A stretch of DNA of 64,000 nucleotides, from the IMG/VR virus record IMGVR_UViG_3300020172_006270, positions 159,269-223,268 of that record; one strand, written 5' to 3'. The position numbers and the translations under genes are program-made. How positions within the stretch are numbered: position 1 is the first letter of the stretch; every line of letters begins with the position of its first letter. Shown one piece after another: positions 1,404 through 25,965 of this stretch. Below the pieces are notes generated by a model, which was not told where the DNA came from, ran no database searches, and was given only the letters and a program-made list of their open reading frames with translations.

Positions 1404-1641
1404 TTCCTCCAGTATTGGAATTCTTCTCTGTATCTAGTTTAGGGTTACGCTTTTTCGATATTCCAAAGAATAGCTTTTCAGGGTCTATCTCCACTTGACC
1501 TGACTTGTTTTGAGAGACATTTCTGGATTTAGCTCCAGTTCTCCCGAAATCGAGATCGGCATTGGAACGGTTGTCCCATATTTCGCCCCCGCCTTCTGGC
1601 GCAGTCTTAGATAGCCATTCTTTGAAACCTGATAAACTCAT
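1381..1641 (-). CDS. Hypothetical protein, CTS-like N-terminus, probably leaderless
   Basis: MSLSGFKEWLSK; TAAATA 5 nt before ATG. Confidence 0.7.
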   Translation of the reverse strand: MSLSGFKEWLSKTAPEGGGEIWDNRSNADLDFGRTGAKSRNVSQNKSGQVEIDPEKLFFGISKKRNPKLDTEKNSNTGGSDENNYI

Positions 1642-1646
1642 GCGGG

Positions 1647-1652
1647 TATTTA
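1647..1652 (-). promoter_or_regulatory. Putative late promoter box TAAATA
   Basis: Recurring TANATA motif, resembles T4 late promoter TATAAATA; directly after a terminator. Confidence 0.6.
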
Positions 1653-1665
1653 GGGTTGGCGCAAC

Positions 1666-1699
1666 AAAAAAGCGGACCCGAAATAAATCGGGTCCGCTT
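1666..1699 (-). terminator. Intrinsic terminator
   Basis: Stem agcggacccga/tcgggtccgct followed by T-run on - strand. Confidence 0.8.
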
Positions 1700-1725
1700 A
1701 GGGAAGAGGGGGCTTCAGTCGAAGG

Positions 1726-2304
1726 TCACTGTTTTTCAAAACAGGCCCAAGCAACTTCTCCCATTACATTTGACATATGTGGGATAAGATTGCATTCTTT
1801 GATCGTATCTTCAATGTCTTTTTTTCTGATTTCAATCCAATTCCAACCACAAGTGTTTTCTTCATAATCGTGTGCCATTATGAAATCGCCCGGCTTCAGA
1901 TAAGGGGCGAAAACATTGAATTCTCTGGGCTTGTCTCCACCATCACAGATCAACAAAACTTTCTTTTCTTCCAATATCATCCTGACAATATCTTCTTTTC
2001 CTTCAAAAAACACATTCTCTATGTGTTTCGTCGCTCCATCAATTCGATATTTCATCCATTCAGTTACATCAAAAGTGTGGATTTCTGCAAAGGGATTAAG
2101 ATCGACCAACAACATTGTCAAGCCGCCAAAAGCAGTTCCAATTTCAATTATTGTGTCAAATTGTTTATCTTTGAAAAATTCTTTGAAGCAACCAATGATT
2201 TTTGGAGCTTGGCGCATTTCTGATGAGCCGCAATGACCTTTGTATGGGCCACCACCAGAGACATAATTGAATTTCATATTTACTCCAAAAAGCGGTCCCG
2301 ACAT
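1726..2304 (-). CDS. Class I SAM-dependent methyltransferase (CmcI/Methyltransf_24-like)
   Basis: IIEIGTAFGG motif I, LICDGG, IMAHDY. Confidence 0.7.
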   Translation of the reverse strand: MSGPLFGVNMKFNYVSGGGPYKGHCGSSEMRQAPKIIGCFKEFFKDKQFDTIIEIGTAFGGLTMLLVDLNPFAEIHTFDVTEWMKYRIDGATKHIENVFFEGKEDIVRMILEEKKVLLICDGGDKPREFNVFAPYLKPGDFIMAHDYEENTCGWNWIEIRKKDIEDTIKECNLIPHMSNVMGEVAWACFEKQ

Positions 2305-2347
2305 AATCGGAACCGCTCAGTGGGAGAAAATGGGGAGAAGTGGGAGA

Positions 2348-3307
2348 TTACTTCTTCTTGATTCCACGCCGAACTACGTTCTGGACGGGCATGGCTGCTG
2401 CCATCGAGACTGCGGTTGCACCATGATTGCCCGCAAAATCCGCACCAGCTTCGCCAGTCCAGGCAACCTTCATGGAGTTGGCAAACAAAGGTCCACCATT
2501 CCACGTTGGAGACGCCTGAACTTCATACTTCGGCTGACGACTCAAGACGCTGGCGAAGTCAACTTTCGGCAAAGCAGCCACATCTACCAGCACAGGAGCC
2601 GGTGCCGATTCCACAACATCTTCAGTGAAGTCGGCAACACTCAGGCTGTCTGAGGCGTAATTGGCCGCAGCGGTTTGTCCCATAGCTCGTTCGGCGAAAT
2701 ACTTCGCTTGACGATTACGCATATTGGAGAATCCCTTGCCCGCATCGGCTGAGGTCTTGTTAGACCATGATGCCATATTGGAAGCACTGGTTCCAACATT
2801 GTGTGAGAGTTGTTCCATATACTCCTTGGTGCAACCCATATAGGTGAACGTCCACTTCTTGGTGGCTTCGCATCCCTGGGTCAACTCTTTCAGAGCATCC
2901 CAACTGTAATGACGGTCTTGGTTGGTTTGACCATCAGAGATTGTCACGATCAAGTAGGCCGTATTGGGGTCTTCATGATCGGTCGTGTTCAGCAATTTCT
3001 GAACTGTATATCCCACTGCATCTCGCATGGCAGTATTGCCAAGCGGTTGGAATTCTTCGACATTTGCTTCCGACAGTTTTTCTGCTGGAACATTCCACAG
3101 ATGCTCGAACACTTCACCGTTGAAAGTTACCAACGAGCAGTAAATTTCCTGCGTCTTGGAGTCTTCCTTCAATTGTTGAACTTGTTCGTTGAACCCACTG
3201 ATTGCTCCGGCCTTCGTCGCAGCCATTGAGCCGGACTTGTCCAGAATGATGGCAACATACGTCTTGGGCTTTGCGACTGCTACTGCTACTGCTTTCTTCT
3301 TCGCCAT
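2348..3307 (-). CDS. von Willebrand factor A (vWA) domain protein
   Basis: MIDAS motif ILDKSGSM, T(AMRDA), VTISDG. Confidence 0.85.
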   Translation of the reverse strand: MAKKKAVAVAVAKPKTYVAIILDKSGSMAATKAGAISGFNEQVQQLKEDSKTQEIYCSLVTFNGEVFEHLWNVPAEKLSEANVEEFQPLGNTAMRDAVGYTVQKLLNTTDHEDPNTAYLIVTISDGQTNQDRHYSWDALKELTQGCEATKKWTFTYMGCTKEYMEQLSHNVGTSASNMASWSNKTSADAGKGFSNMRNRQAKYFAERAMGQTAAANYASDSLSVADFTEDVVESAPAPVLVDVAALPKVDFASVLSRQPKYEVQASPTWNGGPLFANSMKVAWTGEAGADFAGNHGATAVSMAAAMPVQNVVRRGIKKK

Positions 3308-3341
3308 TATGATGTACCTTATTTGAGATGTGTGCTAAGAG

Positions 3342-3381
3342 AAAATATCCTGCCCACATACGAATGGGCAGGATATATTTT
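3342..3381. terminator. Hairpin between co-oriented genes (terminator or processing stem)
   Basis: atatcctgccca/tgggcaggatat inverted repeat with A/T flanks. Confidence 0.6.
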
Positions 3382-3389
3382 GCGTTTGC

Positions 3390-4394
3390 TTACTTCTTGG
3401 GAGCGATGTTATTGGTGAAGGTTCCACCACCACCGGCCCGGAAGTTACGAGGCGACTGGTTGCTGATGTAAGCATTGGGCAGAGCAGGGCTTTGACCCCA
3501 AACTACTTGCTTACCCCCGGAAAAAGGGCTGGTGCTTTCGCTGCCTCCGTCGAGAGGAATCTTCAGCGTCGGAAGATCGCCGGTCTTAGCAAGTTCATCG
3601 AACTTGATTGCTGCCTTGCGGTAGCGAGAACGGAGTTTCTTCAGAGCGCCAGCTTCCATCACGGCGTCGAGAGTGTCATGGGCGATTTCATGCGTGACTC
3701 GCAGTTCGCCTTCATCCATTGCAACACGGATGAGTTGACGGACAGAAAGATCAACGCCTTCCCAGCTTCTACCAGTCTGATCGCACGTTCCGTCAGGACG
3801 CAACGGACGATCTCGATACAAAGGATTCTCGTCAGCGTAGTTCTCCGGCAATTCGCCGATTCGGTACGTCTTCTTGATGGCCCCGTTTACATCCACATCA
3901 TCACGACCAGGATAGCCGCCCTTGATTTCCGAGAGCAACTTGAACGTGGTGTCCACGTCCACAATTCGTCCATCGGAATAAACGATGAACTTTTCGCCCT
4001 TGGAAATTGTGGCAAGACGGACCCCGACTGCGTTGCTGTAGTCTTCGGGATCGAATGCTTCCACCAATTCACGAGGCGTCATTTTGTCGGCTTTTTTGCC
4101 GGAAACTGGACGCTTTTCGTCGGTCTTGGAAGCAGCAGATTTACTGCGGAAGATGTCGGCGATTTCTTTCGCCAAGACACGGGGCTTGACCCCGGTTGGG
4201 GATGCTGGCATACAGGCCAGTAAATCCTCATGGGACAGAGCAGAGAGTCTTTCCTCGCTGGTCCCGCCAGAAGCCTTTACGCATTGGATGAATTCGTCAG
4301 GGCTAAGATACCCTGCTTTGCCTTCACCACCCACGGCTTCGTTGTGTTCTTTGATTGCTGCGAGCGCAGCCTCGATACGGTCGTTGTACGACAT
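3390..4394 (-). CDS. Hypothetical protein (334 aa)
   Basis: Long ORF, SD AAGGTGA, downstream of sigma70-like promoter; no family recognised. Confidence 0.8.
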   Translation of the reverse strand: MSYNDRIEAALAAIKEHNEAVGGEGKAGYLSPDEFIQCVKASGGTSEERLSALSHEDLLACMPASPTGVKPRVLAKEIADIFRSKSAASKTDEKRPVSGKKADKMTPRELVEAFDPEDYSNAVGVRLATISKGEKFIVYSDGRIVDVDTTFKLLSEIKGGYPGRDDVDVNGAIKKTYRIGELPENYADENPLYRDRPLRPDGTCDQTGRSWEGVDLSVRQLIRVAMDEGELRVTHEIAHDTLDAVMEAGALKKLRSRYRKAAIKFDELAKTGDLPTLKIPLDGGSESTSPFSGGKQVVWGQSPALPNAYISNQSPRNFRAGGGGTFTNNIAPKK

Positions 4395-4541: not shown

Positions 4542-5339
4542 TCAGTAATTTTTCCAAATCACTTCGACCTTTTTCTCTTTCGTCTTCTGTTGCGACGAGT
4601 GATTTGCAATCTTTTTCTTTTCGACATTCCATTCTTTATACAGTCGATTGTATAAAGGCGAAGCGTATCCGCTAATCATCGCTTTGCCCTGAAATGCGTT
4701 CAAAGCATGAGCCAATTCAATATGATCGTCGGTAGTCATTTCCGACGCATATACGGTTTTGGATACTCGTGTTTCGTGCAAATATGGTGGATCACAATAT
4801 ACGAAAGTATTTGGCGAGTTAAATGCCTTCATGACCTCGGTAGCAGGCTTATTGAAGATATAGACTTCTCTTATTCGCTCTGCTAAATCCGGCAAGCCTT
4901 TTACAGCGGTCATCCATGCGTTGACATCTCCAGGTTGACCGCCTCGTAGACGATTGCTCCAAGCAAATGCTTTTTTCAACCCGCCACGGCTCATGCGTCG
5001 AACAATAAATTCGTTAACCGCTTGATCCAGATAATCGTCGTACTGAGTCTTCTTGCTGGCTCTGTCGAATGTTTCTTCGCAATACTTGCAGAGGTTCAGA
5101 CGCCGAATCAACTCTCTCGGCTCATCTCGTAAAGCCTGATAGATTTGAATGACGTTTGGATCGAGATCGTTCATTATCTCGATGGCAGATTTTTCTTTAT
5201 TCAAAAGGACATTCGCACCCCCACAAAAGGGTTCCAAGTACGTCATTTCTTTGTACTGTTCAGGAAAATGCGAAATGATCCATTGTGCCAAATAGAATTT
5301 TCCACCGTGGCACTTAAACACTGGTCTGATGGTTTTCAT
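4542..5339 (-). CDS. DNA adenine methyltransferase (Dam/D12 class)
   Basis: GGK, YLEPFCGG (motif I), NDLD, YCDPPY (motif IV). Confidence 0.9.
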   Translation of the reverse strand: MKTIRPVFKCHGGKFYLAQWIISHFPEQYKEMTYLEPFCGGANVLLNKEKSAIEIMNDLDPNVIQIYQALRDEPRELIRRLNLCKYCEETFDRASKKTQYDDYLDQAVNEFIVRRMSRGGLKKAFAWSNRLRGGQPGDVNAWMTAVKGLPDLAERIREVYIFNKPATEVMKAFNSPNTFVYCDPPYLHETRVSKTVYASEMTTDDHIELAHALNAFQGKAMISGYASPLYNRLYKEWNVEKKKIANHSSQQKTKEKKVEVIWKNY

Positions 5340-5577
5340 TCGTAATCCCTTGCCCTATCTCGTTGTTGGTATTGGACTTAGGGGCGGCGTGTACCACATG
5401 CCCGCATTTATTGCAGACAAATTCAAAAGGTCCGTAACCGAGCCTTGATCCTTCCCAAAACCATCCTAGACCGGGGTATTTCGGATGACACTGTTCACAC
5501 AACACGTTCATCGTTCGTTCTTCTTCGGGGATTGACTCGTCCATCCAAAGATAACAATCTTCTTGCCGCACGTCCAT
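5314..5577 (-). CDS. Small Zn-finger protein (start revised to 5577)
   Basis: CxxCH and CxxCGH pairs; TAGATA 4 nt before ATG 5577. Confidence 0.65.
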   Translation of the reverse strand: MDVRQEDCYLWMDESIPEEERTMNVLCEQCHPKYPGLGWFWEGSRLGYGPFEFVCNKCGHVVHAAPKSNTNNEIGQGITNENHQTSV

Positions 5578-5628
5578 ACTGTATCTACTCCCGCATAAAT
5601 AAGTTGTTCTTAATAGAGGGTAAAATTC

Positions 5629-5973
5629 ATGAATCCATATTTGCAAGCCTGTCTTCCCGACCAAAGATTGTCAAAAGCGACCCTTTTGGCCATGTTGGAC
5701 AGTCATATTGACACATCAAAGGTGATTGTTGTGTCATCTGGTGAGATTATAGACGTGAGCCAACTGGCTCAAACGGAGATAAACCCTCATTTGAATGATG
5801 GGACGTGGGTGTACTACGAAGACCGCCTCCCAAGGAGGCTGTTGTTGACCAACCAGAACTGGAGAATAGTGAGCTTTAATTCGGCGTCACGTCTGGTTTG
5901 TGTACAGATATTTCCCGCATCGGGTATGCGGGTGCTAAATTTTACATTGCCTCAATTGACGGCAAAATTTTAG
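5629..5973 (+). CDS. Hypothetical protein
   Basis: SD GAGGG, TAAATA upstream. Confidence 0.6.
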   Translation: MNPYLQACLPDQRLSKATLLAMLDSHIDTSKVIVVSSGEIIDVSQLAQTEINPHLNDGTWVYYEDRLPRRLLLTNQNWRIVSFNSASRLVCVQIFPASGMRVLNFTLPQLTAKF

Positions 5974-11924: not shown

Positions 11925-12221
11925 TTAAATCCATCCATCTTTGATCGCCACCTTGATCTCTTCCATTGTAACCTTTCGGCTCAAGGTTTCGGATACCGCC
12001 TCGATAAAATGTTCCTCAATGCTTCGCTGAATCTCTCGGCGATACATTGGTCCCATTTTCATGGCGTCCAAATATGAGTTCATGTCAATTTGCCAATCCA
12101 GAAGCTCACCGTCAATGAAGATGGCTTTTTCAATACCACCGCCTTTGGCTGGCCGCATCTTAACTTCAAATCGTTTTTTTCCCTCTGGAGGCGTCGGGAA
12201 TTGGAGTATTTCTTCGCTCAT
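11925..12221 (-). CDS. Hypothetical protein (start revised to 12221)
   Basis: MSEEILQF..., ACTCTATTAT 4 nt before ATG; avoids overlap with divergent gene. Confidence 0.65.
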   Translation of the reverse strand: MSEEILQFPTPPEGKKRFEVKMRPAKGGGIEKAIFIDGELLDWQIDMNSYLDAMKMGPMYRREIQRSIEEHFIEAVSETLSRKVTMEEIKVAIKDGWI

Positions 12222-12254
12222 GACAATAATAGAGTTCGACTGCGTAAATATTGT

Positions 12255-12791
12255 ATGCGTTTTCACAATTGGCTAGTTTTGCAGGAATCTAACCTACAAG
12301 ACCTCTATACAAGTACGGTTCAAGCCTTCCCCCGGACGACCAAAAGACAACATGCCACCGATTTAGTTCGGATCATCGAGTTGAATTGGACGCCCTTCTT
12401 GGGGGTCAAAACCCTATTCATAAAGGGTATTGCGCATAGCGAAGAAAGCGGAAAAGAATATTCCCCAATGGTATTGTTCAAAGGTGTGAATTATCACAAC
12501 GCCAAGGACAACCAGAATTGGATCGAGATTGTAGCGAATGATGGTCGTCACTACGTCTTTGAAAGACTCAGTAACGATAACGATGTGTTAGTTCGGTGTG
12601 ATTGTAATGATTTCAAATGGCGTTTCAACTACACAGATCACATAGATACATCGTTGTATGGGAGAGTCAGAAAGAAGTACGAAGCGAATGTGAATCCTGG
12701 CTCGGCGAATCCGCTCGAAATGCCGGGAATGTGCAAGCACTTAATCAAACTCGTGCAATCTCTCGATCACGCTGGAATCTTGGAGGATTAA
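12255..12791 (+). CDS. SWIM Zn-finger protein with CTS-like N-terminus (start revised to 12255)
   Basis: CDCNDF...MCKHL; MRFHNWLVLQE; TAAATA 4 nt before ATG. Confidence 0.75.
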   Translation: MRFHNWLVLQESNLQDLYTSTVQAFPRTTKRQHATDLVRIIELNWTPFLGVKTLFIKGIAHSEESGKEYSPMVLFKGVNYHNAKDNQNWIEIVANDGRHYVFERLSNDNDVLVRCDCNDFKWRFNYTDHIDTSLYGRVRKKYEANVNPGSANPLEMPGMCKHLIKLVQSLDHAGILED

Positions 12792-13852: not shown

Positions 13853-13988
13853 AGTATTTTATCTCCTTTAATACGAGTGAACTTTTTGTTCACAATAGCT
13901 ATGCAGGCCATATTTTTATTCCGATTTCGTCTACATATCTTCGGGAAAAATATTGCGAAACGTATATAGGGTATACAAGGAGACAATT

Positions 13989-17041: not shown

Positions 17042-17539
17042 ATGGGTCAGAAGTTTATTTGGTCTGCGGAATGGAGAGACGATAAGACATGGCAGCTTAT
17101 CGCACCGCCTGCTCCTGTACAAATTGGCACACGTCCACATTTGACCATAGAAGAAATAGCCGTGCAGCATGGCAATAATACTGCGTGGATACCCGGCAAG
17201 GCATCCTGGAATGAAACAAAGATCACCTATAACGACGTAGAAAATGAAGAAGGTGGTGCGTTGTTTATGCGATGGGTGTCTGAGCAATATCGTGCCTTAG
17301 ACACAACAGAAAGCCGTGGCTGGCAATCAGAACGAGCGACAGTTATTTTGAGGCTACATGGTGGAAATGGTGAAGTTTTAGAAGTGTGGTACTTGGAAGA
17401 TTCTTTTATCACCGCTCTGGATTTTGGCTGTCCAGGCTACACTAGCTCCTTAGATTACGAGCTAAATGTTGCTGTTAGATATTCCGATGTCAGCTATTCG
17501 ACACCTGATCCTAAAACATGGCTGAAGCCACTTACTTGA
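17042..17539 (+). CDS. T4 gp19-like tail tube family protein (orphan paralog)
   Basis: RPxLTIEE, PGKASW, ITYxD, NGEVLEVWxL, LDFG, VRY pattern of gp19 family. Confidence 0.7.
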   Translation: MGQKFIWSAEWRDDKTWQLIAPPAPVQIGTRPHLTIEEIAVQHGNNTAWIPGKASWNETKITYNDVENEEGGALFMRWVSEQYRALDTTESRGWQSERATVILRLHGGNGEVLEVWYLEDSFITALDFGCPGYTSSLDYELNVAVRYSDVSYSTPDPKTWLKPLT

Positions 17540-17732
17540 CGGGAACTGCTGTTGCACCACCTGCTCCTTTGCAAGCTCCACCTGGGCCGGGACCACCACC
17601 CATGCCACACAATTTTAGATCGTGTGGTTTTGGAGTTGTATCTTTTGGGCCGGGCTTAAACAAAGAGTCTTGAGCCTTCCCTTTGCTGATCCAACCGCCT
17701 TCGTTCAATGATAGCCAATGTTTGAAATCCAT
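17532..17732 (-). CDS. Small protein with CTS-like N-terminus
   Basis: MDFKHWLSLNE; TACATA 4 nt before ATG. Confidence 0.7.
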   Translation of the reverse strand: MDFKHWLSLNEGGWISKGKAQDSLFKPGPKDTTPKPHDLKLCGMGGGPGPGGACKGAGGATAVPVK

Positions 17733-17754
17733 GAAGTATGTACGCTCGGCGCAT

Positions 17755-17786
17755 AAAAAAAGGACGGCATGAAAGCCGTCCTTTAT
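17755..17786 (-). terminator. Intrinsic terminator
   Basis: aaaggacggc/gccgtccttt stem + T7 on - strand. Confidence 0.8.
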
Positions 17787-18710: not shown

Positions 18711-18762
18711 ATTTCATTATATTCACTTTCAAAGAATATGTACATCGGGAGATAAATAAGCT

Positions 18763-19494
18763 ATGAACTTTTCAGAATGGTTATCAACTAATGAAGCTCG
18801 CTGGCGAGGCCCCGTAGGTGGAGCCTTTGGCCGTGATTCTCGTCGTATGCAACAACAACAAAAGCCGGTGACACCTGTGGCAAAACCAGAAGAAGAATCG
18901 CCCAAGCCAGATTTAGGACATGCTCCCAACCCTGCTGAACGTACTCCACCGCCTCAAATGCGTATGGGCAATAGGTTCCAGAATATTGACCAGAGAGTTC
19001 AATATGGAAAGAGCATTGAAAAGCAAATATTTGATAGCTTGGTTCGATGTGGGATGAAGCTCCGTGAACCGTCCAGCCAAGAAGATATGTACGACAAGAT
19101 TGACGGCTGGTGGGAAACGCCGAGTGGTGAGAAGCCTATTCAGATCAAATATCGTGACACCGGAGATGATATTCTCTTCGAGGTAATGAAGGATTATCGA
19201 CGTGGCGTGCCAGGAAGAGACATGGTTGGTAAAGCTGAGTTTTATGCCGTGCTAACTCGTGCCGGAGGCAAAATCGTATTAGTGAGCGTTGCAGAAGCCA
19301 AAAAGCTCATAGAAGAGATGCGTACCAGAGCCGAAGATGAAGGGTTTGACCAGCGTGGCAACTTCCGCATGGGTGGTGCAATATTGCGAGTTCGACCTGA
19401 TCCACGATCACAACAAGATAAACTCATGGCGTATATTCCGGTTTCAATGCTCAAGCAAATCACGCCGCCATGTTCTGCCCAAGTAAAATTCTAA
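18763..19494 (+). CDS. Putative PD-(D/E)XK nuclease with CTS-like N-terminus
   Basis: E...DMYDKIDGW...IQIKYR; MNFSEWLSTNE; TAAATA 4 nt before ATG. Confidence 0.6.
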   Translation: MNFSEWLSTNEARWRGPVGGAFGRDSRRMQQQQKPVTPVAKPEEESPKPDLGHAPNPAERTPPPQMRMGNRFQNIDQRVQYGKSIEKQIFDSLVRCGMKLREPSSQEDMYDKIDGWWETPSGEKPIQIKYRDTGDDILFEVMKDYRRGVPGRDMVGKAEFYAVLTRAGGKIVLVSVAEAKKLIEEMRTRAEDEGFDQRGNFRMGGAILRVRPDPRSQQDKLMAYIPVSMLKQITPPCSAQVKF

Positions 19495-19501: not shown

Positions 19502-20122
19502 ATGCTTAAAATTTTAAGGTCAAATGTGCCATCAACTCGTTTGGAATTGATTTCACATCTAATCCAAGAACTTGATTATAAAACTTACTTGGAAATTGGT
19601 GTGGGTGTATTCGATACCTTTAATCACATTGAATGCCCACATAAAGTCTGTGTAGACCCGGCTAATGTCGAGGCCACATATCACATGACTTCAGATCAGT
19701 TCTTTGCCATCAATACGCAAAAGTTCGATTTGATCTTTATTGATGGACTGCATCAGTCAGATCAAGTCGATAAAGACATCCTTAATTCTTTGAAGTGCAT
19801 CAATGAAGGCGGCACTATTGTCGTGCATGATTGCAACCCTTTTCTGGAAGAACACCAAACATATTTTCAAACCACTATTGCATGGACTGGTGATGTTTGG
19901 AAGTCCTTTGTGAAGTTCCGTAATTCATGGAACCTGCCTGCATATGTGGTGAATATTGATTGGGGGTGTGGCGTGATTGAATGCGACATCCCTGCAACTC
20001 AAATCCATAATTTCAACAGAAGCATCAGTTGGAATGAGTTTGCTATTGAAAAGGACAAATTGTTGGGGCTAATTCATCCAAATGAACTTATGGAAAAAGT
20101 GAAGTCTCGCCAGAAAGGATAA
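19502..20122 (+). CDS. Class I SAM-dependent methyltransferase (Methyltransf_24-like)
   Basis: YLEIGV, FDLIFIDGLH, IVVHDCNP, WTGDVWK. Confidence 0.85.
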   Translation: MLKILRSNVPSTRLELISHLIQELDYKTYLEIGVGVFDTFNHIECPHKVCVDPANVEATYHMTSDQFFAINTQKFDLIFIDGLHQSDQVDKDILNSLKCINEGGTIVVHDCNPFLEEHQTYFQTTIAWTGDVWKSFVKFRNSWNLPAYVVNIDWGCGVIECDIPATQIHNFNRSISWNEFAIEKDKLLGLIHPNELMEKVKSRQKG

Positions 20123-20154
20123 ATACATTCGGTTCCTTTGGCATAGGAGGCTGT

Positions 20155-20271
20155 ATGAACCGAATATGGAAATTCATCAAGGAGATTTTTCACGACGATG
20201 GATCGTGGGGAAAAATCGAAGCAGCACACATCAGAAGACTCATTTTGTTGTATTATCGGCGTCGGGATTAG
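20155..20271 (+). CDS. Putative 38-aa small protein
   Basis: Below track cutoff; TAAATA box, SD AGGAGG, MNRIWKFIKEIF... Confidence 0.45.
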   Translation: MNRIWKFIKEIFHDDGSWGKIEAAHIRRLILLYYRRRD

Positions 20272-20617
20272 GCATTTGATGATAGTTTTTTCCTTTACCT
20301 AAACAAGCCTGCTCGATAAGCGCAATGTAGTAATCATCAAGATTGTCGATGCCGAGTTCTTGCTCGCCGAATCCGTTTTTGCGAAGCAAGTTTCTCATAC
20401 TCATGCCCCAACCAAAATGGTGCGTCACCCACCATCTGGTTGGGCTTTCTTGTATCATATCTGATACAACTTCAATCAAAGGCCGCTCAGGGTCTTTGTC
20501 TTCTTCTTTGCCTGTCTGTTGGGATAGCCAGTTATTCAAAAAAATAATGGCACCATCCAATGTCTTAGGCGGTGAGTCTTTGCTTACTTCCCAAGGGTCG
20601 GTGATTTTGCGTGTCAT
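20240..20617 (-). CDS. Hypothetical protein starting with ITDPWEVS motif (start revised to 20617)
   Basis: ATGA overlap with hydrolase stop; HHFGWGMSMRNLLR. Confidence 0.7.
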   Translation of the reverse strand: MTRKITDPWEVSKDSPPKTLDGAIIFLNNWLSQQTGKEEDKDPERPLIEVVSDMIQESPTRWWVTHHFGWGMSMRNLLRKNGFGEQELGIDNLDDYYIALIEQACLGKGKNYHQMPNPDADNTTK

Positions 20618-21492
20618 CTTCCATCCAATAAATGCGACCAAAGTAAATCGTAATCAATATCAGCCAGGATATAATCCCCTTCGGGATTAGGCTTCGTGGT
20701 CCAACCACTTTCTTCTTTCACGGCATTGCCACGAATCCATTTGCCGATCTCAGGATGCAGATGGCAAGCAGCGGCAGTAGGGTCGTGAAACTTTTTGGAA
20801 TCATGTCGTTCCAAATACATCAATGCTGCCTTCTCAAAGAGATTGTGTGCAGCGACGTTTTTAACGACAACTTGATTGTCTCTCTTTTCCCAGGCTTCTT
20901 TGTTGAATAGAACCGTGTGACAAATGTTCTTGCCGACCATTCGTCGCTCACCAATATTGCCTGAAAGGAATGTAACGCCAGCAGGCCGGTCCCCATTCAG
21001 GTTGAACGTCGGCATCCAGTTCTTTCCCTCGAAATCAAGGTGTGGTTGCTTGGGGCCATAGAGAGAATAAGGCAGGAAGCCGCCCTGCATTGTGGCCCTT
21101 TTGAAATGAGTCTCAGGGTGTTTGCTCATGTATTTGCCAACACTCGAAACCGGGCCGATGATAAACAACTCACTCTCCGGGTAAGCGGCGACAACATCTT
21201 GAATGATGTCTACGCCTAACCCGTCAGCTTTCTGCTCAAGAGGGTAGTTATACTCCTTGAGCAGTTGATGATGAATCGAACCTGAAGACAGCTTGGTTCT
21301 ATCAGTCTTGCTCGTACCGATAGGGATTTTTAGCCCGGTTTCCTCACATAGAAATCTGGCAATGGCTATCTGATCGGGGTCGCCCGGAGAAATGAGTATG
21401 GCTCGAAGATTGACCCCGGCTGCGATCAGATAAGAGATCGCAAAGAAATCATCAGGGTCATGACCAATATCTGTTTCTACAATTAAATCCAT
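20614..21492 (-). CDS. Nucleoside hydrolase (IU-NH family)
   Basis: ETDIGHDPDD, IGP, MQGG, FN, FHDP. Confidence 0.8.
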   Translation of the reverse strand: MDLIVETDIGHDPDDFFAISYLIAAGVNLRAILISPGDPDQIAIARFLCEETGLKIPIGTSKTDRTKLSSGSIHHQLLKEYNYPLEQKADGLGVDIIQDVVAAYPESELFIIGPVSSVGKYMSKHPETHFKRATMQGGFLPYSLYGPKQPHLDFEGKNWMPTFNLNGDRPAGVTFLSGNIGERRMVGKNICHTVLFNKEAWEKRDNQVVVKNVAAHNLFEKAALMYLERHDSKKFHDPTAAACHLHPEIGKWIRGNAVKEESGWTTKPNPEGDYILADIDYDLLWSHLLDGR

Positions 21493-21499
21493 GTTGACA

Positions 21500-22450
21500 T
21501 TATACCTTCTTCCTGTTCGGGGAGAAGCCATTCATTAAAACGTGCAGGGAGTCTAGTCTGGTGTATTCTTCAAATGTCATCCACTCGCTGCCAGTCAACA
21601 ACAGTCTTGCTATTTCTCTTTTACTTTCTTTTTGAGCCTTGGTCCAGTCCAAGTGATGGATGTGCTTCCATAGTCCAACCGTGTAATATACAGCAACAAC
21701 GAGCAGCACGTCCACATATGGCAGTTTCTTTTGTATTTCATGCAACCGTTCTTTGGTGGCATACAGATAAACGTCTGGATACATGCGGTGCATACTTTCT
21801 GGGCCTCTCACATGCAGAGCTTTGACTTCGTGTTCTATTTGAGTCTTCTCAACCAAGGCACAATACAGACCAAATTCATCAAAGGTGTCTGGGTTCTGAT
21901 ACATCGACATGGTGATATGACCACCGAATTCTTCGTCATATTTCTTTTGGTTTTTGGTCAAGAACGTATTGCGAACAAAAGAGAAGTCGATGCCGAACTC
22001 GATTGCATTTTGGACAATGCTGCTGTGAATCGCCTGAGCGCCTTCCCAAATCCTGTTGTGCATAATTTGGTCGTTCAACATGATGTTGCGATATGACCCA
22101 CGAGGCAGAAATCCACGAATCATTTTGGGATCATCTTGAATGGGCGGCTTTGCGAAGAACCAAATATCCTCTTCCATAAACAAAAACCATTCAGGATATA
22201 TTTGGTACTCTTTTATGATTCTGGGAAAATGTTTCCAAAAGTTGATGAATCCGTTTTCCGTCACATTCTGGGCAATGAAGGGAATGTAGGTAACTTGATT
22301 GTCGTTCTTCAGGCCGAAAGACTCAATAAAAGCTGGCAATGTAATGATGAAAATGTGATCGTCTTCCGACAACGCCCACTTCAAGTTTCGTACATGAATG
22401 TCAATTCCATCAGGAAATTGGCCGACCATCGTGATAGATGCAACTCGCAT
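21500..22450 (-). CDS. Putative GT-A glycosyltransferase-like protein
   Basis: FLFMEEDIW (ExD) after a beta-alpha N-terminal region. Confidence 0.45.
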   Translation of the reverse strand: MRVASITMVGQFPDGIDIHVRNLKWALSEDDHIFIITLPAFIESFGLKNDNQVTYIPFIAQNVTENGFINFWKHFPRIIKEYQIYPEWFLFMEEDIWFFAKPPIQDDPKMIRGFLPRGSYRNIMLNDQIMHNRIWEGAQAIHSSIVQNAIEFGIDFSFVRNTFLTKNQKKYDEEFGGHITMSMYQNPDTFDEFGLYCALVEKTQIEHEVKALHVRGPESMHRMYPDVYLYATKERLHEIQKKLPYVDVLLVVAVYYTVGLWKHIHHLDWTKAQKESKREIARLLLTGSEWMTFEEYTRLDSLHVLMNGFSPNRKKV

Positions 22451-22500
22451 TTAACCCCCGAATTTTTCTGGTGTGCAGTATATACGGTAAAGGAGGACTT

Positions 22501-22872
22501 ATGAAAAAGAGTTTCTTTGCCGTACTAATGTTGGCGATCCTTGCCACTCCTATTGTGGTCTTGAGTATCATCGGCATTATGCGAGTCAAGCCGGAGGTCC
22601 ATCAGCCTATAAATGAAGTTCCTGTAGAAGTGAAGCCAGTTCAGCCTGCAACACCATCAGAAACACCAGTCGCACCAGTTACACCAGCAACCGGAGTGCC
22701 GACTCAGCCAGTCAGCCCAACAGCTACTTTTATGAGTGGATATTGGGATGGTTGGCATGGAAAGTGGCTCGGTCCAATTCGTTGGACATTGAGTGATGAT
22801 TATCGTCAGGGTCATATGCTTGGGTCTTATGACCGGAGAAACGGCATTGACCGTTATCCAGCACCTAAGTAA
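22501..22872 (+). CDS. Membrane-anchored protein with GYxDG motif domain
   Basis: SD AAGGAGG; TM helix, P/T/V linker, FMSGYWDGW...YRQGHMLGSYDR. Confidence 0.75.
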   Translation: MKKSFFAVLMLAILATPIVVLSIIGIMRVKPEVHQPINEVPVEVKPVQPATPSETPVAPVTPATGVPTQPVSPTATFMSGYWDGWHGKWLGPIRWTLSDDYRQGHMLGSYDRRNGIDRYPAPK

Positions 22873-22877
22873 ACGAC

Positions 22878-22907
22878 AAAAGCCAGGGGAAAAATCCCCT
22901 GGCTTTT
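22878..22907. terminator. Bidirectional intrinsic terminator
   Basis: aaaagccagggg/cccctggctttt. Confidence 0.85.
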
Positions 22908-22932
22908 GCCTTTTCACGCATTCGCAGAAAAA

Positions 22933-23478
22933 TTACTTAGAGTAACTTCCGTATGCCATGTTGCCCGTCAACCGGGAATACGTTCCATCGGAAATCTTGG
23001 CGTAACTGCCATTTGGCAGTCTTCCATAAGACTCGCCGTCGATCTGAATGCCAGCACCACCAGGGAAACCTTCTTGGTGAGGGTTCGGCGGCTGAATCTT
23101 CTTTGGCGGCAAAGGAAGTTCTTCCGGCTGAGTGGTCTTCTTTGGAGCCGGAGCAGGGAACTCACGGTACTCGCCCTTATACGGCAGATAGTTCGGCTCA
23201 GGCATCACGGCCTTCTTGCCTTCAGTGTATTGAGGCTGAGGTTGAGGCTGACCAACAATCACATATCCACCGCTCGAAGAACAACCGCTGTTGTAGCTAT
23301 AGACGGGAGCAGAGTGGTAAAAAGGTGCCGAGTGGAACACTCGCCCACCAAAGACATGGCCAGAGCCACACTGGTTTCCACCAAAGAAACGCCCGCCCGT
23401 GTTGCACTGAGCCGATGCGGTGTCGCTCCAAGCGACGAGGACTGCGATTGCAGCCACGATTACAAGAAACTTCTTCAC
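22933..23478 (-). CDS. Secreted low-complexity Gly/Pro/Tyr-rich protein
   Basis: Signal peptide ending ASA-Q; SD AAGGAG; GTG start. Confidence 0.75.
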   Translation of the reverse strand: MKKFLVIVAAIAVLVAWSDTASAQCNTGGRFFGGNQCGSGHVFGGRVFHSAPFYHSAPVYSYNSGCSSSGGYVIVGQPQPQPQYTEGKKAVMPEPNYLPYKGEYREFPAPAPKKTTQPEELPLPPKKIQPPNPHQEGFPGGAGIQIDGESYGRLPNGSYAKISDGTYSRLTGNMAYGSYSK

Positions 23479-23536
23479 TGCAAGACTCCTTCAGAGAATC
23501 GGAAATTCCAGTCGGTCGTTCCAACTGATCCCCCAC

Positions 23537-23564
23537 AGTTTACTCGATCTCGGTCGGAAGTCAA
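23537..23564 (-). promoter_or_regulatory. Sigma70-like promoter TTGACT-N16-TAAACT
   Basis: Same spacing as 4478 and 18363 promoters. Confidence 0.55.
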
Positions 23565-23568
23565 CCCG

Positions 23569-23811
23569 TCATTTCTTCTGCACCAACTTGGTGAACTCGC
23601 TGTCGGAAAGGTAGGTTTTCGGGTTGCGAAGAATCTTTTCCATCAGTTCTTTCCCCCGTGGGCTGTTGAGATGCTCCCAGATGAAACGTCGGGTGGATAT
23701 ATCGTACTGATCGAGTGCGGTTTTCAGAGCAGATACGAGGGTCGATATAGCCTGGACTTTATTGTTGCCCCGGTCTTTGCCTTCGTTGATGTATTCCTTG
23801 AATGATTCCAT
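23569..23811 (-). CDS. Small protein with CTS-like N-terminus
   Basis: MESFKEYINE; TAGATA 4 nt before ATG. Confidence 0.75.
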   Translation of the reverse strand: MESFKEYINEGKDRGNNKVQAISTLVSALKTALDQYDISTRRFIWEHLNSPRGKELMEKILRNPKTYLSDSEFTKLVQKK

Positions 23812-23898
23812 GCTTTATCTAGGGTATTGGCTAAAGTTATTGTCGGCACTGCCGATATAACTTGTAACTTCCAACTACTTTCAACAACTAGGTGAACT

Positions 23899-24351
23899 AT
23901 GAAAAAGATCAACAAAACCGACCCCGCACGAATCAAAGCTGGCGACCTGATGGCAATCGTGCATTATGTCAAAGTTAAGAGTGCCATTCCAAGCAACTAC
24001 GAACTCTTCACATCCGACGTAGACTTAGACAACCACACCATGCGAGTTCAAGGAAAAGAACTTCTGGAATGTGCCTTCTCTGCCGATCAATACTCCGAAG
24101 AAATCAAAGTCTCGAAGACACAAGCAGCGGAACTGTTGATTCATTCTCCCAACCGCCCATTCACGGTCAGCTTCAATAAGACTGATGGCTCGGAACGCAC
24201 ACTGAGAGGCCGTCTGATCTCTCCAGAGCCACTATTGGGTCGGTCAATGGTAGAAGACCTGGATGAAACCAGCGACCATAAATTGCGACAAGTGGATCAC
24301 AGAACGATCAATTGGTTGATCGTCGAAGGCACGAAGTATATCGTGAAGTAA
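23899..24351 (+). CDS. Protein with C-terminal SH3/WYL_2-like beta-barrel
   Basis: FTVSFNKTDGSERTLRGRL; SD AGGTGA. Confidence 0.6.
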   Translation: MKKINKTDPARIKAGDLMAIVHYVKVKSAIPSNYELFTSDVDLDNHTMRVQGKELLECAFSADQYSEEIKVSKTQAAELLIHSPNRPFTVSFNKTDGSERTLRGRLISPEPLLGRSMVEDLDETSDHKLRQVDHRTINWLIVEGTKYIVK

Positions 24352-24352
24352 T

Positions 24353-24631
24353 TCAGCACCATACGACTTGGTTTTCTCTAATGAAGTAATGCGTCCTACA
24401 GGGCAATTGAAAGTTGCCGATAGAAGGACTTAGGGAAACCTTCCCATTGTCGTTTGTAAGCGTCCAACCGTTGTGTGGTGGGTTTGGATCAATAGGGGTG
24501 CATACTTGGTGTCCACAGCCACAGCAGCACTTGTGAATGGCAGTAGTGTACTCCAGAGAGATGTAGAGTACGCCTTCTTTCATGTCTTCTGGGATGTAGT
24601 GAACGAATTCGGGCGTTATGTTTGTTAGCAT
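24353..24631 (-). CDS. DUF6527-like Cys/His protein (start revised to 24631)
   Basis: GVLYIS, HKCCCGCG, W.L, SLSPSIGN, CRTHYFI; TAGATA 4 nt before ATG. Confidence 0.75.
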   Translation of the reverse strand: MLTNITPEFVHYIPEDMKEGVLYISLEYTTAIHKCCCGCGHQVCTPIDPNPPHNGWTLTNDNGKVSLSPSIGNFQLPCRTHYFIRENQVVWC

Positions 24632-24705
24632 GGTGTATCTATTGTCTCGCCACAATTTGTTTTGATGGCTTGCTGGCTAAATACATTAGCCACAAAGGAG
24701 ATGAT

Positions 24706-25164
24706 ATGGCACCACAAGAAAATGAACAGAATCCAATGTCTCTTGAAAACCTACCTGCTTACTTGAAGTCTCTTAAAGAGAAAGGAAGCACAGGTGATTG
24801 TCTTGTTGATATGGGAAGGATTGAGGAACCAAAGAAAATGCCTAATAAATGGTTATGGACTCAGCGAATCTTGTTTACGCTTGCTATCTGCATGATCGCT
24901 GGCACAACCGGGTTAATTACTTATGATTTAGCGTCACGACAAGAGCTTACTGTCGTGGTGAATCTCAACAAAGACGCCAACCCAGCCCAGGCAATTCCAG
25001 AAATGGTTTCTGACAGTGGCGGCACTGTTATAGCAGTCAAACAACATGACAGCACTTCAGCTTATGAAGTCAAGGTGTCTACCCGCAAGAGCCGGAAAGC
25101 GCTTTTGGAATGGCTCAACAAGAACAAGAACGTCAAAGAAGTGAAGCTAAAAGAAGACAAATGA
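24706..25164 (+). CDS. Single-pass membrane protein
   Basis: SD AAGGAG; central TM helix. Confidence 0.7.
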   Translation: MAPQENEQNPMSLENLPAYLKSLKEKGSTGDCLVDMGRIEEPKKMPNKWLWTQRILFTLAICMIAGTTGLITYDLASRQELTVVVNLNKDANPAQAIPEMVSDSGGTVIAVKQHDSTSAYEVKVSTRKSRKALLEWLNKNKNVKEVKLKEDK

Positions 25165-25577
25165 TAATTGAATTCAAACAATGGTTGGAGAATAGCTTTC
25201 CAGAAGCAGCCTGGGGTCCATCTTCTTTAGTTGGAAGCAATGGAACTTCGCTCAGAGTCAATGGTGGATACATCGACATTCAACCTGTTACTAAATGGTC
25301 GCCCAGAAGCCAATCTGTAATCGACTTTTACGTTGATGAAGCCAAAAGGAATCAAGGAATTGGAGATTGGCTAGTCAAACAAGCTAAATTGAAATTCAAA
25401 GATTTGGGAGCGCAAGTATCATCAATTCCTTCGATGAAAGTTTTCTTCAATAATGGATTTAGAAATCCAAATATGGCAAATCAATCATTTGAAGATCATG
25501 TGAAAGAATTTCAAAACAATGGCTCATCACTCTTCCTAGCCATGAATGACGACCAAGGAAAGCCTTACTTTAATTGA
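25161..25577 (+). CDS. GNAT acetyltransferase with CTS-like N-terminus
   Basis: FYVDEAKRNQGIG (AcCoA motif A), FFNNGF; MIIEFKQWLE. Confidence 0.75.
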   Translation: MIIEFKQWLENSFPEAAWGPSSLVGSNGTSLRVNGGYIDIQPVTKWSPRSQSVIDFYVDEAKRNQGIGDWLVKQAKLKFKDLGAQVSSIPSMKVFFNNGFRNPNMANQSFEDHVKEFQNNGSSLFLAMNDDQGKPYFN

Positions 25578-25580
25578 CGT

Positions 25581-25943
25581 TTATTCAACAGGAATAGCAG
25601 CTTGACCTTGGCTTATGACAGCGTAGGAAATTGATTTGTTGATTCCACTAACGCCACCCATGAAAGTCAGGTTGACTAAATAGCCATCACTTTCAGCACC
25701 ACCTACACTTACAGCAAACTGATCGACTCCCAGAGCAGTACAGATATAGGAATAACTATAGAATCCTCCTGGCAATGGATCGGGGAATTCTAGTGTGTAG
25801 CCACCCCCGCCGTTTAGCGTAGCTATGCCAGCCACGATGATTCGTGGTCCTGCTAATGGCACATATGTATCACGATTATTGTGTGGACCTTTACTTGTTG
25901 CTGCGCCTGGTCCTGATACGCCTGTTACTGATGATGCTCCCAT
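25581..25943 (-). CDS. Small beta-rich putative capsid decoration/fibre protein (start revised to 25943)
   Basis: MGASSVTGVSGPG; directly downstream of MCP; TACATA 4 nt before ATG. Confidence 0.65.
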   Translation of the reverse strand: MGASSVTGVSGPGAATSKGPHNNRDTYVPLAGPRIIVAGIATLNGGGGYTLEFPDPLPGGFYSYSYICTALGVDQFAVSVGGAESDGYLVNLTFMGGVSGINKSISYAVISQGQAAIPVE

Positions 25944-25965
25944 ACTGTATGTATTACAGCGCAAC

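What the first reader, a model, noticed from the sequence alone, without database searches (positions are those of the whole stretch)
1641..25953. TANATA box 4-5 nt before ATG: probable leaderless late transcripts and terminator-promoter cassettes
Seen: TAAATA-5-ATG (1641-), TAGATA-4-ATG (5577-), TAAATA-4 (12255+), TACATA-4 (17732-), TAAATA-4 (18763+), TAGATA-4 (23811-), TAGATA-4 (24631-), TACATA-4 (25943-), leaving no room for a transcribed SD. The same box precedes many SD-led genes (near 13963, 14562, 20120, 22479, 24677, 39167, 41398, 41963, 42358, 46805, 51551, 58689), and palindromic TATATA serves divergent pairs. Three copies lie 12-13 nt after a terminator T-run with TGCGC in between. 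Established: T4 gp55 late promoters are a lone TATAAATA about 5 nt before +1. Inference: a relaxed gp55-type promoter starting at or next to the AUG; 5 of the 8 leaderless genes also carry the CTS-like tag.
Basis: partly seen in the sequence, partly recalled or inferred. Interest (0 to 1): 0.65.

Follow-up and report, generated by a model that had tools for sequence, protein, structure and literature searches.

The report
Leaderless promoter boxes in huge phage
In a roughly half-megabase T4-related phage from fresh water, a short TAnATA promoter box sits 4-5 bases before the ATG of dozens of genes, many with a T4-like capsid-targeting tag, so their messages probably start at the start codon with no ribosome-binding leader; T4 itself does not do this.

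Summary
All eight sites exist. The window holds 8 TANATA-N4-ATG matches against 1.3 expected. In the 223-kb genome all 18 such sites open ORFs of at least 60 codons.

The box is the genome's main upstream motif. Its distance to start codons is bimodal: 4-8 nt with no SD, none at 10-14 nt, then 15-60 nt with an SD in between. There is no -35 element. Only ATG follows the close boxes, and the base before the ATG is C or T in 17 of 18 cases.

A 595-kb relative (LR756511.1) shows the same peak at about 88 sites. Every leaderless gene with an orthologue there keeps the box and spacing while the flanks have diverged. T4 has no such sites; its box lies at least 13 nt from the ATG.

The genome encodes one sigma with region 2 only, of gp55 type. 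No gp33 or gp45 was detected. It also carries a separate class of host-type promoters (-35 plus extended -10).

About 15 of about 21 genes with a T4-CTS-like N-terminus (M-x-F-K-x-W-L...E) are leaderless, and a gp21-type protease is present.

No RNA data exist, so the start sites and the late timing remain inferred. Verdict: a new variant of known kinds, namely gp55-type promoters used to make leaderless mRNAs.

The parts
1639..1652 (-). TAAATA box (1647-1652), 5-nt spacer and ATG (1639-1641) of a tagged 86-aa gene (1381-1641, MSLSGFKEWL...)
   Evidence: The ORF scores best in its own frame.
1665..1699 (-). Intrinsic terminator (12-bp stem, T-run) whose tail GTTGCGC runs into the box 12-13 nt downstream
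5575..5587 (-). TAGATA box, 4-nt spacer and ATG of an 87-aa ORF (5314-5577). This is the weakest of the set: no orthologue was found and GGGAG lies just upstream of the box.
12245..12257 (+). TAAATA box, 4-nt spacer and ATG of a tagged 178-aa gene (12255-12791, MRFHNWLVLQE...)
   Evidence: The orthologue in LR756511.1 (56% aa identity) also starts at TAAATA-N4-ATG.
17730..17742 (-). TACATA box, 4-nt spacer and ATG of a tagged 66-aa gene (17532-17732, MDFKHWLSLNE...)
17759..17784 (-). Intrinsic terminator followed by a T-run, ATGCGC, and the box 12 nt after the T-run
18753..18765 (+). TAAATA box, 4-nt spacer and ATG of a tagged 243-aa gene (18763-19494, MNFSEWLSTNE...). GGGAG lies just upstream of the box.
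23809..23821 (-). TAGATA box, 4-nt spacer and ATG of a tagged 80-aa gene (23569-23811, MESFKEYINE...)
24629..24641 (-). TAGATA box, 4-nt spacer and ATG of an untagged 92-aa gene (24353-24631, DUF6527)
   Evidence: Pfam PF20137, E 1e-21.
25941..25953 (-). TACATA box, 4-nt spacer and ATG of an untagged 120-aa gene (25581-25943), directly downstream of the major capsid gene
25971..25994 (-). Terminator hairpin after the capsid gene. On the minus strand its T-run plus GTTGCGC precedes the box by 12 nt.
61439..61451 (-). TAAATA box, 4-nt spacer and ATG of a 76-aa gene (61211-61441).
   Evidence: The orthologue in LR756511.1 starts at TATATA-N4-ATG.
22479..22484 (.). Example of a palindromic TATATA shared by a divergent SD-led pair. 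Other boxes before SD-led genes are at 13963, 14562, 20120, 24678, 39168, 41398, 41963, 42358, 46805, 51551 and 58688.
26028..27464 (-). gp23-like major capsid protein gene (context: late head module)
   Evidence: phrog_138, E 1e-84
28405..29088 (-). gp21-type prohead protease (Peptidase_S77), the enzyme expected to cut off the CTS-like tags
   Evidence: PF03420, 91.7 bits
32835..35378 (-). gp20-like portal gene (context; used to find relatives)
   Evidence: phrog_213, E 2e-74

Best explanation
TAnATA is the -10-like element of a promoter class specific to this phage. It works without a -35 element and is most likely read by host RNA polymerase carrying the phage's gp55-type sigma, which has region 2 only.

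Transcription starts about 5 nt downstream of the box. At about 26-30 genes of this 223-kb genome (nine in the window) the box lies 4-5 nt, rarely 7, before the ATG. The A of the ATG, preceded by a pyrimidine, would then be the first transcribed base, and the mRNA has no leader and no Shine-Dalgarno sequence. Such mRNAs would be translated by the leaderless route, in which a ribosome binds a 5'-terminal AUG. At other genes the same box lies at least 15 nt upstream, which is just enough for a leader that begins with the SD.

About half of the leaderless genes encode small proteins with an N-terminal tag like the T4 capsid-targeting sequence. These proteins are probably loaded into the prohead and trimmed by the gp21-type protease, so this promoter class is probably late.

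What is shown: the motif, its spacing, its conservation, the presence of the sigma and the protease, and the contrast with host-type promoters and with T4.

What is inferred: the start site, the timing, which sigma reads the box, and the fate of the tag.
For: (1) Spacing peak. All 18 TANATA-N4-ATG sites open long ORFs. The window holds 8 against 1.3 expected.

(2) An unbiased hexamer scan finds only two signals at fixed positions before the ATGs of long ORFs, in both genomes: SD hexamers, and TAAATA/TATATA/TACATA/TAGATA at spacer 4-5.

(3) TATATA is the most enriched hexamer upstream of genes. Box-to-ATG distances are bimodal: 4-8 nt, none at 10-14 nt, then 15-60 nt with an SD. The relative shows the same trough. 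In the shortest leadered cases the SD begins right where a start site about 6 nt after the box would fall.

(4) There is no -35 motif, only a weak A/T patch 14-18 nt upstream of the box. Sigma-70-type sites are not enriched in window 1-40000, while terminators are. Three leaderless genes start 22-24 nt after a strong terminator's T-run.

(5) The base at -1 is C or T in 17/18 and 29/31 N4 sites. Only ATG follows the close box, never GTG or TTG. Both are expected if the A of the ATG is +1 and a 5'-AUG is needed.

(6) Conservation. LR756511.1 (portal 60% aa identity) has the same peak, with 88 sites. All G000 leaderless genes with an orthologue there (28-61% identity) keep the box and spacing while the flanks are at random-level identity. 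The DNA of the tagged 5' ends differs at synonymous sites and in register, so the sites are not recent copies of one another.

(7) A 183-aa sigma is encoded at G000 114596-115147. Its best PHROG is the gp55 family (E 6e-9), it hits Sigma70_r2 at 30.9 bits, and no region 4 is found anywhere in the genome. The model has pLDDT 84 and folds as sigma domain 2, with T4 gp55 (7d7c_F) at Z 9.5 and rmsd 2.8 A. T4 pocket residues Y97 and T99 align to invariant Y and T.

(8) The same genome has a distinct host-type class, TTTACA-N13/14-cGTGGTAnnAT, at about 10 sites. All are outside the window and lie ahead of tRNA clusters and other genes. The lone TAnATA box, which ends in A rather than T, is therefore a separate specificity.

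(9) T4 control: TATAAATA lies at least 13 nt from the ATG, with a mode of 25-28 nt. The T4 ip genes carry the same tag but have SD leaders.

(10) Geometry: the T4 box spans -13 to -6, so TAnATA-N5-ATG puts the A of the ATG exactly at +1.
Against: - There is no transcript evidence. No RNA run holds this phage, so start sites are inferred from geometry only.
- The commonest spacer, 4 nt, is one base shorter than the T4 geometry.
- The box is not the T4 8-mer: the third base is free and the two bases in front are not TA.
- If the box's two A's (positions 2 and 6) were aligned with T4's flipped A-12 and A-8, the predicted start would fall inside the ATG.
- gp33 and a gp45-type or beta-type clamp were not detected in G000 or in the complete relative. 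The sigma lacks T4's C-terminal clamp-binding motif, so the T4 activation mechanism cannot simply be assumed.
- The box also precedes a DnaB-like helicase gene, so 'late' may be too narrow.
- Two sites have GGGAG 10-11 nt upstream of the ATG.
- A crude look at a candidate host genome shows no sign that leaderless genes are common there.
Confidence: 0.68

Rival explanations
1. The box is an ordinary -10 element read by the host's primary sigma. The leaderless layout would then simply copy a host habit, as in Actinobacteria or Deinococcus, where a TANNNT box lies about 6-7 nt before many start codons.
For: The box is AT-rich and sits in the -10 position. Leaderless genes with only a -10 box are common in some phyla (abstracts listed). 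The host is unknown; Acidobacteriota are hinted at.
Against: The last base of the box is invariably A, whereas primary sigmas need T there. The same genome has clear host-type promoters with a -35, an extended -10 and a final T, so two specificities coexist. A phage sigma of gp55 type is encoded. A sample of a candidate host genome shows no -10-like peak near start codons (crude test).
Confidence: 0.12
2. The box acts in the RNA, not the DNA. It would be an SD-independent translation signal, such as an AU-rich ribosome or S1 landing site or the site of a phage factor, at a fixed distance from the AUG in mRNAs that start further upstream.
For: There is a fixed 4-5 nt distance to the ATG and no SD. 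Some of these genes lie inside same-strand gene runs where read-through RNA is likely.
Against: The identical box lies 15-60 nt upstream of SD-led genes, with the SD in between, and never at 10-14 nt. A palindromic TATATA sits in 15 divergent intergenic regions. Three sites follow strong terminators by 12-13 nt. In the relative, two divergent genes are only 22 bp apart with overlapping boxes. The pyrimidine at -1 and the exclusive use of ATG fit a start site.
Confidence: 0.1
3. The box marks an RNA cleavage site. A phage or host endonuclease would cut longer transcripts next to the AUG and so create leaderless mRNAs by processing.
For: T4 uses sequence-specific mRNA cleavage (RegB, annotated). 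5' ends made by processing and by initiation cannot be told apart without 5'-PPP mapping.
Against: This does not explain boxes far upstream of SD-led genes, the divergent-pair palindromes, the terminator-box cassettes or the presence of a dedicated sigma. No nuclease candidate was sought.
Confidence: 0.04
4. The pattern is a by-product of chance or of recent duplication of one 5' cassette among paralogues.
For: Many of the genes share an N-terminal tag, so shared ancestry of the 5' ends is conceivable.
Against: Shuffles never reach the observed count. About half of the sites belong to untagged, unrelated genes. The tagged 5' ends differ in DNA sequence and register. Orthologues at 28-61% identity keep the box while their flanks diverged.
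Confidence: 0.02

Closest known systems
Bacteriophage T4 late promoters (TATAAATA, gp55 with gp33 and the gp45 clamp)
   Same: A lone AT-rich -10-like box with no -35 element. The TAAATA variant equals the 3' six bases of the T4 box, as in the Aeh1 variant, where the first two bases are not TA. A small sigma with only region 2 and gp55-family similarity is encoded. The phage has T4-type portal, capsid, protease and sheath genes.
   Different: The third base of the box is free (A, T, C or G). Box-to-ATG distances of 4-5 nt do not occur in T4, where the minimum is 13 nt and the mode 25-28 nt. gp33 and gp45 were not detected. The sigma lacks the T4 C-terminal clamp-binding tail.
Leaderless mRNAs of bacteria and phages (e.g. 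lambda cI from PRM; abundant in Actinobacteria and Deinococcus)
   Same: A -10 element a few bases before the start codon, no SD, and ATG as the start codon.
   Different: Here a subset (about 10% of genes) in an otherwise SD-using phage genome is driven by a phage-specific box rather than the host TANNNT. That subset is tied to one functional class, tagged head proteins. Dual RNA-seq of the giant phages phiKZ and AR9 found no leaderless transcripts.
T4 capsid-targeting sequence (CTS) of internal proteins IPI, IPII and IPIII
   Same: The N-termini are MKTFKEF.. and MKTYQEFIAE in T4. Here they are M-x-F-K-x-(W/F)-(L/M)...E, and MKTFKEF.., MKTFNQWLE.. in the relative. A gp21-type protease is present. 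Most tags end in an (L/I)-x-E motif 10-13 residues in.
   Different: There are many more tagged genes: about 21 in 223 kb, and 40 or more in the relative. T4's tagged genes have SD leaders. Packaging and cleavage are untested here.
Terminator-promoter modules between T-even genes (promoter-plus-stem-loop units proposed to aid gene shuffling; recalled from memory, not checked here)
   Same: A hairpin terminator directly abuts the next promoter in compact cassettes.
   Different: Here the cassette continues straight into the ATG. It also carries a conserved (G/A)TTGCGC tail of unknown role.

Membership tests
T4-type late promoter system (gp55 / gp33 / gp45) | Promoter is a single -10-like AT-rich box with no conserved -35 element | tested here: met
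   The profile of 73 boxes upstream of genes shows no -35, only a weak A/T patch 14-18 nt upstream. Sigma-70-type sites are not enriched.
T4-type late promoter system (gp55 / gp33 / gp45) | Box sequence TATAAATA (8 bp, tightly kept in T4) | tested here: not met
   The consensus is TAnATA. The third base is A 88, T 66, C 59, G 42 of 255. The base before the box is A, C or G, and there is no conserved TA in front.
T4-type late promoter system (gp55 / gp33 / gp45) | Phage-encoded gp55 homologue (small sigma, region 2 only) | tested here: met
   G000 114596-115147: phrog_234 E 6e-9; PF04542 30.9 bits; no region 4. Fold Z 9.5 to T4 gp55 7d7c_F, tied with sigma-A domain 2. hhalign to T4 gp55 alone is weak (E 0.06).
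T4-type late promoter system (gp55 / gp33 / gp45) | gp33 co-activator | tested here: inconclusive
   phrog_254 finds nothing in G000 or in the complete 595-kb relative. gp33 is small and diverges fast, so absence is not proven.
T4-type late promoter system (gp55 / gp33 / gp45) | gp45 sliding clamp as activator, and a clamp-binding tail on gp55 | tested here: not met
   phrog_223 and PF02768 find nothing in G000 or the relative. The sigma's C-terminus lacks the T4 SLDFLYEAND-type tail.
T4-type late promoter system (gp55 / gp33 / gp45) | Active late in infection, start site about 6 nt after the box | not testable with these tools
   No RNA runs hold this phage.
Leaderless mRNA genes | Primary 5' end at, or within a few nt of, the start codon | not testable with these tools
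   No RNA runs. Inferred from the 4-5 nt box spacing and the T4 geometry.
Leaderless mRNA genes | No Shine-Dalgarno sequence before the start codon | tested here: met
   There is no room between box and ATG. 14 of 16 tagged box-led starts have no SD-like core within 4-11 nt. Exceptions: GGGAG 10-11 nt upstream at 5577 and 18763.
Leaderless mRNA genes | Start codon is AUG (needed for binding of a 5'-terminal start) | tested here: met
   At spacers 4-5 ATG is strongly enriched, while GTG and TTG stay at background in both genomes.
T4-like CTS-bearing internal head proteins | N-terminal tag of about 10 aa resembling MKTYQEFIAE / MKTFKEF | tested here: met
   T4 ip genes were read directly. For the tags here and in the relative.
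T4-like CTS-bearing internal head proteins | gp21-type prohead protease in the genome | tested here: met
   PF03420, 91.7 bits, at window 28405-29088(-).
T4-like CTS-bearing internal head proteins | Packaged in the head and cleaved after (L/I)-x-E | not testable with these tools
   Most tags show L/I-x-E 10-13 residues in. No virion proteome is available.

The most novel reading that the evidence does not exclude
A whole clade of roughly 0.5-Mb T4-related phages, possibly infecting Acidobacteriota, runs a second, SD-free expression channel. A gp55-like sigma that works without gp33 or gp45 would fire from a 6-bp box placed so that dozens of messages begin at their AUG; the 595-kb member has about 90 such sites. 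The compact unit 'box - 4 nt - AUG - capsid-targeting tag' would serve as a portable module that turns any small ORF into a late-made, head-packaged and probably injected protein. Leaderless translation would let the phage set these proteins' output apart from SD-dependent translation late in infection.
Probability: 0.3. Interest if true: 0.75.

Novelty: new variant of a known kind. Interest (0 to 1): 0.62.

Why it matters
If the start sites are confirmed, this would be the first large, conserved set of leaderless genes driven by a phage-specific sigma in the T4 superfamily. It would show that gp55-type promoters can work with a looser box and apparently without the clamp and co-activator that define T4 late transcription.

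It gives a simple rule for calling true start codons in huge-phage genomes: TAnATA, then 4-5 nt, then ATG. My own codon-score-based greedy ORF caller dropped three of these genes or extended them to upstream TTG or GTG codons.

It also flags a large repertoire of CTS-tagged small proteins as candidate injected proteins. In T4, proteins of this kind are anti-defence factors. They are natural targets for functional screens.

Tried and rejected
- Megablast of 8 kb against the phage collection: no match.
- RNA evidence: no RNA run holds the phage. Read laying on window 20000-25999 (6000 letters) showed only contigs of the same phage at low depth in three other samples and no variant inside a box. 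It says nothing about transcripts.
- Portal-neighbourhood loci from IMG/VR (76 loci): only a modest N5 peak, because few leaderless genes lie near the portal and the loci are redundant.
- phrog_12791 (another late-sigma family), gp45, gp33, beta clamp, Rpb2-type and T7-type RNA polymerase families: nothing significant in G000 or the 595-kb relative.
- PDB sequence search with the sigma: nothing significant. Foldseek E-values were weak although every top hit is a sigma. hhalign against T4 gp55 alone gave E 0.06.
- PHROG and Pfam scans of the nine leaderless proteins in the window: only DUF6527 and two families of unknown function.
- Host habit: a crude scan of 164 kb of a candidate Acidobacteriaceae genome showed no leaderless signature. 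This is not decisive.
- Literature: no paper in the held library links leaderless transcripts with gp55-type promoters or huge phages.
- No alternative genetic code was needed; table 11 gives 90% coding density.
- The large protein searches were not used.

Full report
**What the window is.** The window is the last 64 kb of a 223,268-bp IMG/VR virus record (G000, CheckV 46% complete). GC content is about 46%. PHROG scans show a T4-superfamily myovirus:
- gp20-like portal, tail sheath, large terminase, SbcC-like nuclease, ribonucleotide reductase and DnaB-like helicase;
- gp23-like major capsid protein at window 26028-27464;
- gp21-type prohead protease at 28405-29088.

The nearest public genome is LR756511.1, an unannotated 595,163-bp 'uncultured phage' (portal 60% aa identity). 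IMG/VR holds many relatives, on contigs up to 527-533 kb. The DNA occurs in freshwater and sediment metagenomes, and no RNA run holds it.

**The observation.** All eight sites are as described. The window has 8 TANATA-N4-ATG matches against 1.30 expected, and no shuffle out of 100 reaches 8.

With N5 there are 4 matches against 1.36 expected. Only 1641 is a convincing start; 55944 is an in-frame internal ATG of gene 55431-56372.

Genome-wide, spacer 4 has 18 sites and all 18 open ORFs of at least 60 codons, although only a quarter of ATGs do so. Spacer 5 has 8 of 13, and neighbouring spacers 0-2. Each window ORF scores best in its own frame among the six.

An unbiased scan of all hexamers at all spacers before long-ORF ATGs returns only two signals, in both G000 and the relative: Shine-Dalgarno hexamers, and TAAATA/TATATA/TACATA/TAGATA at spacer 4-5.

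**The box is a promoter element, not a private feature of these genes.**
- Most genes are SD-led: 206 of 273 by my calls.
- TATATA is the most enriched hexamer in the 70 nt upstream of genes. TAAATA and TACATA follow the SD words.
- The distance from box to start codon is bimodal: 24 cases at 4-8 nt, none at 10-14 nt, then a broad group at 15-60 nt in which an SD lies between box and ATG.
- In the shortest leadered cases (15-18 nt) the SD begins just where a start site about 6 nt after the box would fall.
- The 595-kb relative shows the same peak (31, 40 and 17 long ORFs at spacers 4, 5 and 6), the same trough at 9-15 nt and a rise at 16-19 nt.
- There is no -35 motif, only a weak A/T patch 14-18 nt upstream. 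The base before the box is rarely T.
- Sigma-70-type promoter matches are not enriched in window 1-40000, while terminator-like hairpins are.
- Of the 33 TATATA palindromes, 15 lie in divergent intergenic regions.

**Why leaderless.**
- Three genes (1641, 17732, 25943) start 22-24 nt after the T-run of a strong terminator, so there is room for a -10-only promoter and nothing else.
- For about 15 genes the ATG is fixed as the true start by a shared N-terminal tag that begins there.
- At N4 sites the base before the ATG is a pyrimidine in 17/18 (G000) and 29/31 (relative), which matches the usual Y(-1)R(+1) start rule.
- Only ATG follows the close box. GTG and TTG stay at background, although SD-led genes use them in about 16% of my calls. 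Leaderless translation is known to depend on a 5'-terminal AUG (reference cited).
- The T4 box spans -13 to -6, so TAnATA-N5-ATG puts the A of the ATG at +1 and N4 puts it one base closer.

**Conservation.**
- Ten G000 sites (nine genes) have an orthologue in the relative at 28-61% aa identity. For the eight pairs inspected, the orthologue starts at a box with 4-7 nt spacing, while the remaining upstream sequence is at random-level identity.
- In the relative, two divergent genes are 22 bp apart with overlapping boxes.
- The tagged 5' ends differ at synonymous sites and in the register of the tag, so the sites are not copies of one DNA cassette.

**Control.** In 79 kb of T4, including most late genes, TATAAATA never lies closer than 13 nt to the ATG of a long ORF, and the mode is 25-28 nt. 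T4 ipI, ipII and ipIII carry the tag (MKTFKEF.., MKTYQEFIAE) behind ordinary SD leaders.

**Which polymerase.** G000 encodes a single sigma-like protein (114596-115147, 183 aa).
- Its best PHROG is the gp55 'late sigma' family (E 6e-9). It passes Pfam Sigma70_r2, and no region 4 is found anywhere in the genome.
- It is conserved at 55-98% identity in 281 IMG/VR stretches.
- A model built from 23 homologues (pLDDT 84) matches only sigma domain 2 structures. T4 gp55 (7d7c_F) scores Z 9.5, rmsd 2.8 A over 114 residues, tied with primary sigmas at Z 9.4-10.7.
- The T4 residues that hold flipped promoter bases (Y97, T99) align with an invariant Y and T, while H95 is F.
- The relative has a second, shorter paralogue.
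- No gp33, gp45-type clamp, beta clamp or phage RNA polymerase family was detected in G000 or in the complete relative. The sigma lacks T4's clamp-binding tail.

**A second promoter class gives an internal contrast.** About ten sites between 33 and 139 kb of G000 read TTTACA-N13/14-cGTGGTAnnAT, that is a -35 plus an extended -10 ending in T. None is in the window. They lie ahead of the tRNA clusters and other genes. These look like host-sigma promoters. The lone TAnATA box, always ending in A, is therefore a different specificity. This is the main argument against the rival that the host's primary sigma reads it.

**The tag.** About 21 G000 genes begin M-(x)1-5-F-(K/S/R)-x-(W/F/Y)-(L/M/I), mostly followed by (L/I)-x-E within 10-13 residues. 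About 15 of them are box-led and leaderless. In the relative about half of the 88 sites carry tags such as MKTFNQWLE and MKTFKEF. With a gp21-type protease present, and given the published role of the T4 CTS, the tagged proteins are probably loaded into the prohead and trimmed. That places this promoter class late, but neither point is shown. The nine leaderless proteins in the window have no known function apart from one DUF6527.

**Limits.**
- There are no transcripts, so start sites, timing and the pairing of sigma with box are inferences.
- The commonest spacer is one base shorter than in T4.
- The box is looser than the T4 8-mer.
- The box also precedes a helicase gene.
- Two sites have GGGAG upstream of the box.
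- The rivals (host sigma, RNA-level translation signal, RNA processing site, chance or paralogy) are weighed in their own sections. Together I give them about 0.3.

**Verdict.** It is a new variant of known kinds. I found no description of it in the held literature.

Noticed in passing
G000 33199(+), 65109, 75213, 80394, 85851, 101850, 104803, 106494, 131652, 138851 (all -); outside the window: A second promoter class, TTTACA-N13/14-cGTGGTAnnAT (-35 plus extended -10, ending in T). It sits ahead of tRNA clusters and other genes and is absent from the window. These are probably host-sigma (early) promoters.
   Followed up: partly
window 1659-1665, 17743-17758, 25954-25970 (minus strand); LR756511.1 369676, 400549, 487219, 523458: Terminator T-runs are followed by (G/A)TTGCGC. 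In G000 all three such sites run into a leaderless box. In the relative the same tail follows at least five good hairpins, twice followed by N4-TATAAT. Its role is unknown.
   Followed up: partly
L190 / G001:C5 (CAVSYW010000005.1) about 888,950; L203 8522-9238: A 933-kb contig of an Acidobacteriaceae MAG is about 60% GC for 889 kb. It then switches sharply to about 49% GC, with 43 hits to G000 proteins, up to the contig end. The switch falls inside an open frame and there is no tRNA nearby. This is either integration of a huge phage (IMG/VR also labels G000 'provirus') or an assembly chimera. A second hit lies in a Chloracidobacterium MAG, so Acidobacteriota are a host hint.
   Followed up: partly
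LR756511.1 400576 (L102): The relative has a second, 124-aa gp55-like sigma. Its own gene is preceded by terminator-TTGCGC-N4-TATAAT-N5-ATG, a leaderless-looking layout with a box ending in T. No counterpart was found in the 223 kb of G000.
   Followed up: partly
LR756511.1 468317(-) / 468340(+): Two divergent orthologues of G000 123159 and 123719 start only 22 bp apart, with overlapping TAGATA and TATATA boxes between them.
   Followed up: partly
window 31147-31200: TACATA-N3-ATG at 31156 opens the ORF, but a perfect tag (MKTFQDYVSLKE) begins ten codons later at 31186. The real start is probably 31186, about 33 nt after the box and with only a weak SD.
   Followed up: no
G000 75075-85385 (L005, L006): There are 14 tRNA genes in clusters (Leu x7, Ser x4, Phe x2, Tyr), all on the minus strand.
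   Followed up: no
window 5314-5664, 12090-12791, 24353-24655, 25581-25976: The longest-ORF starts (TTG or GTG) of four leaderless genes lie upstream of the box-led ATG. A simple gene caller extends three of these genes or drops them through overlap. The box rule gives the better start.
   Followed up: yes
window 55933-55946: TAGATA-N5-ATG lies inside gene 55431-56372, in frame. It may be an internal start or chance.
   Followed up: no
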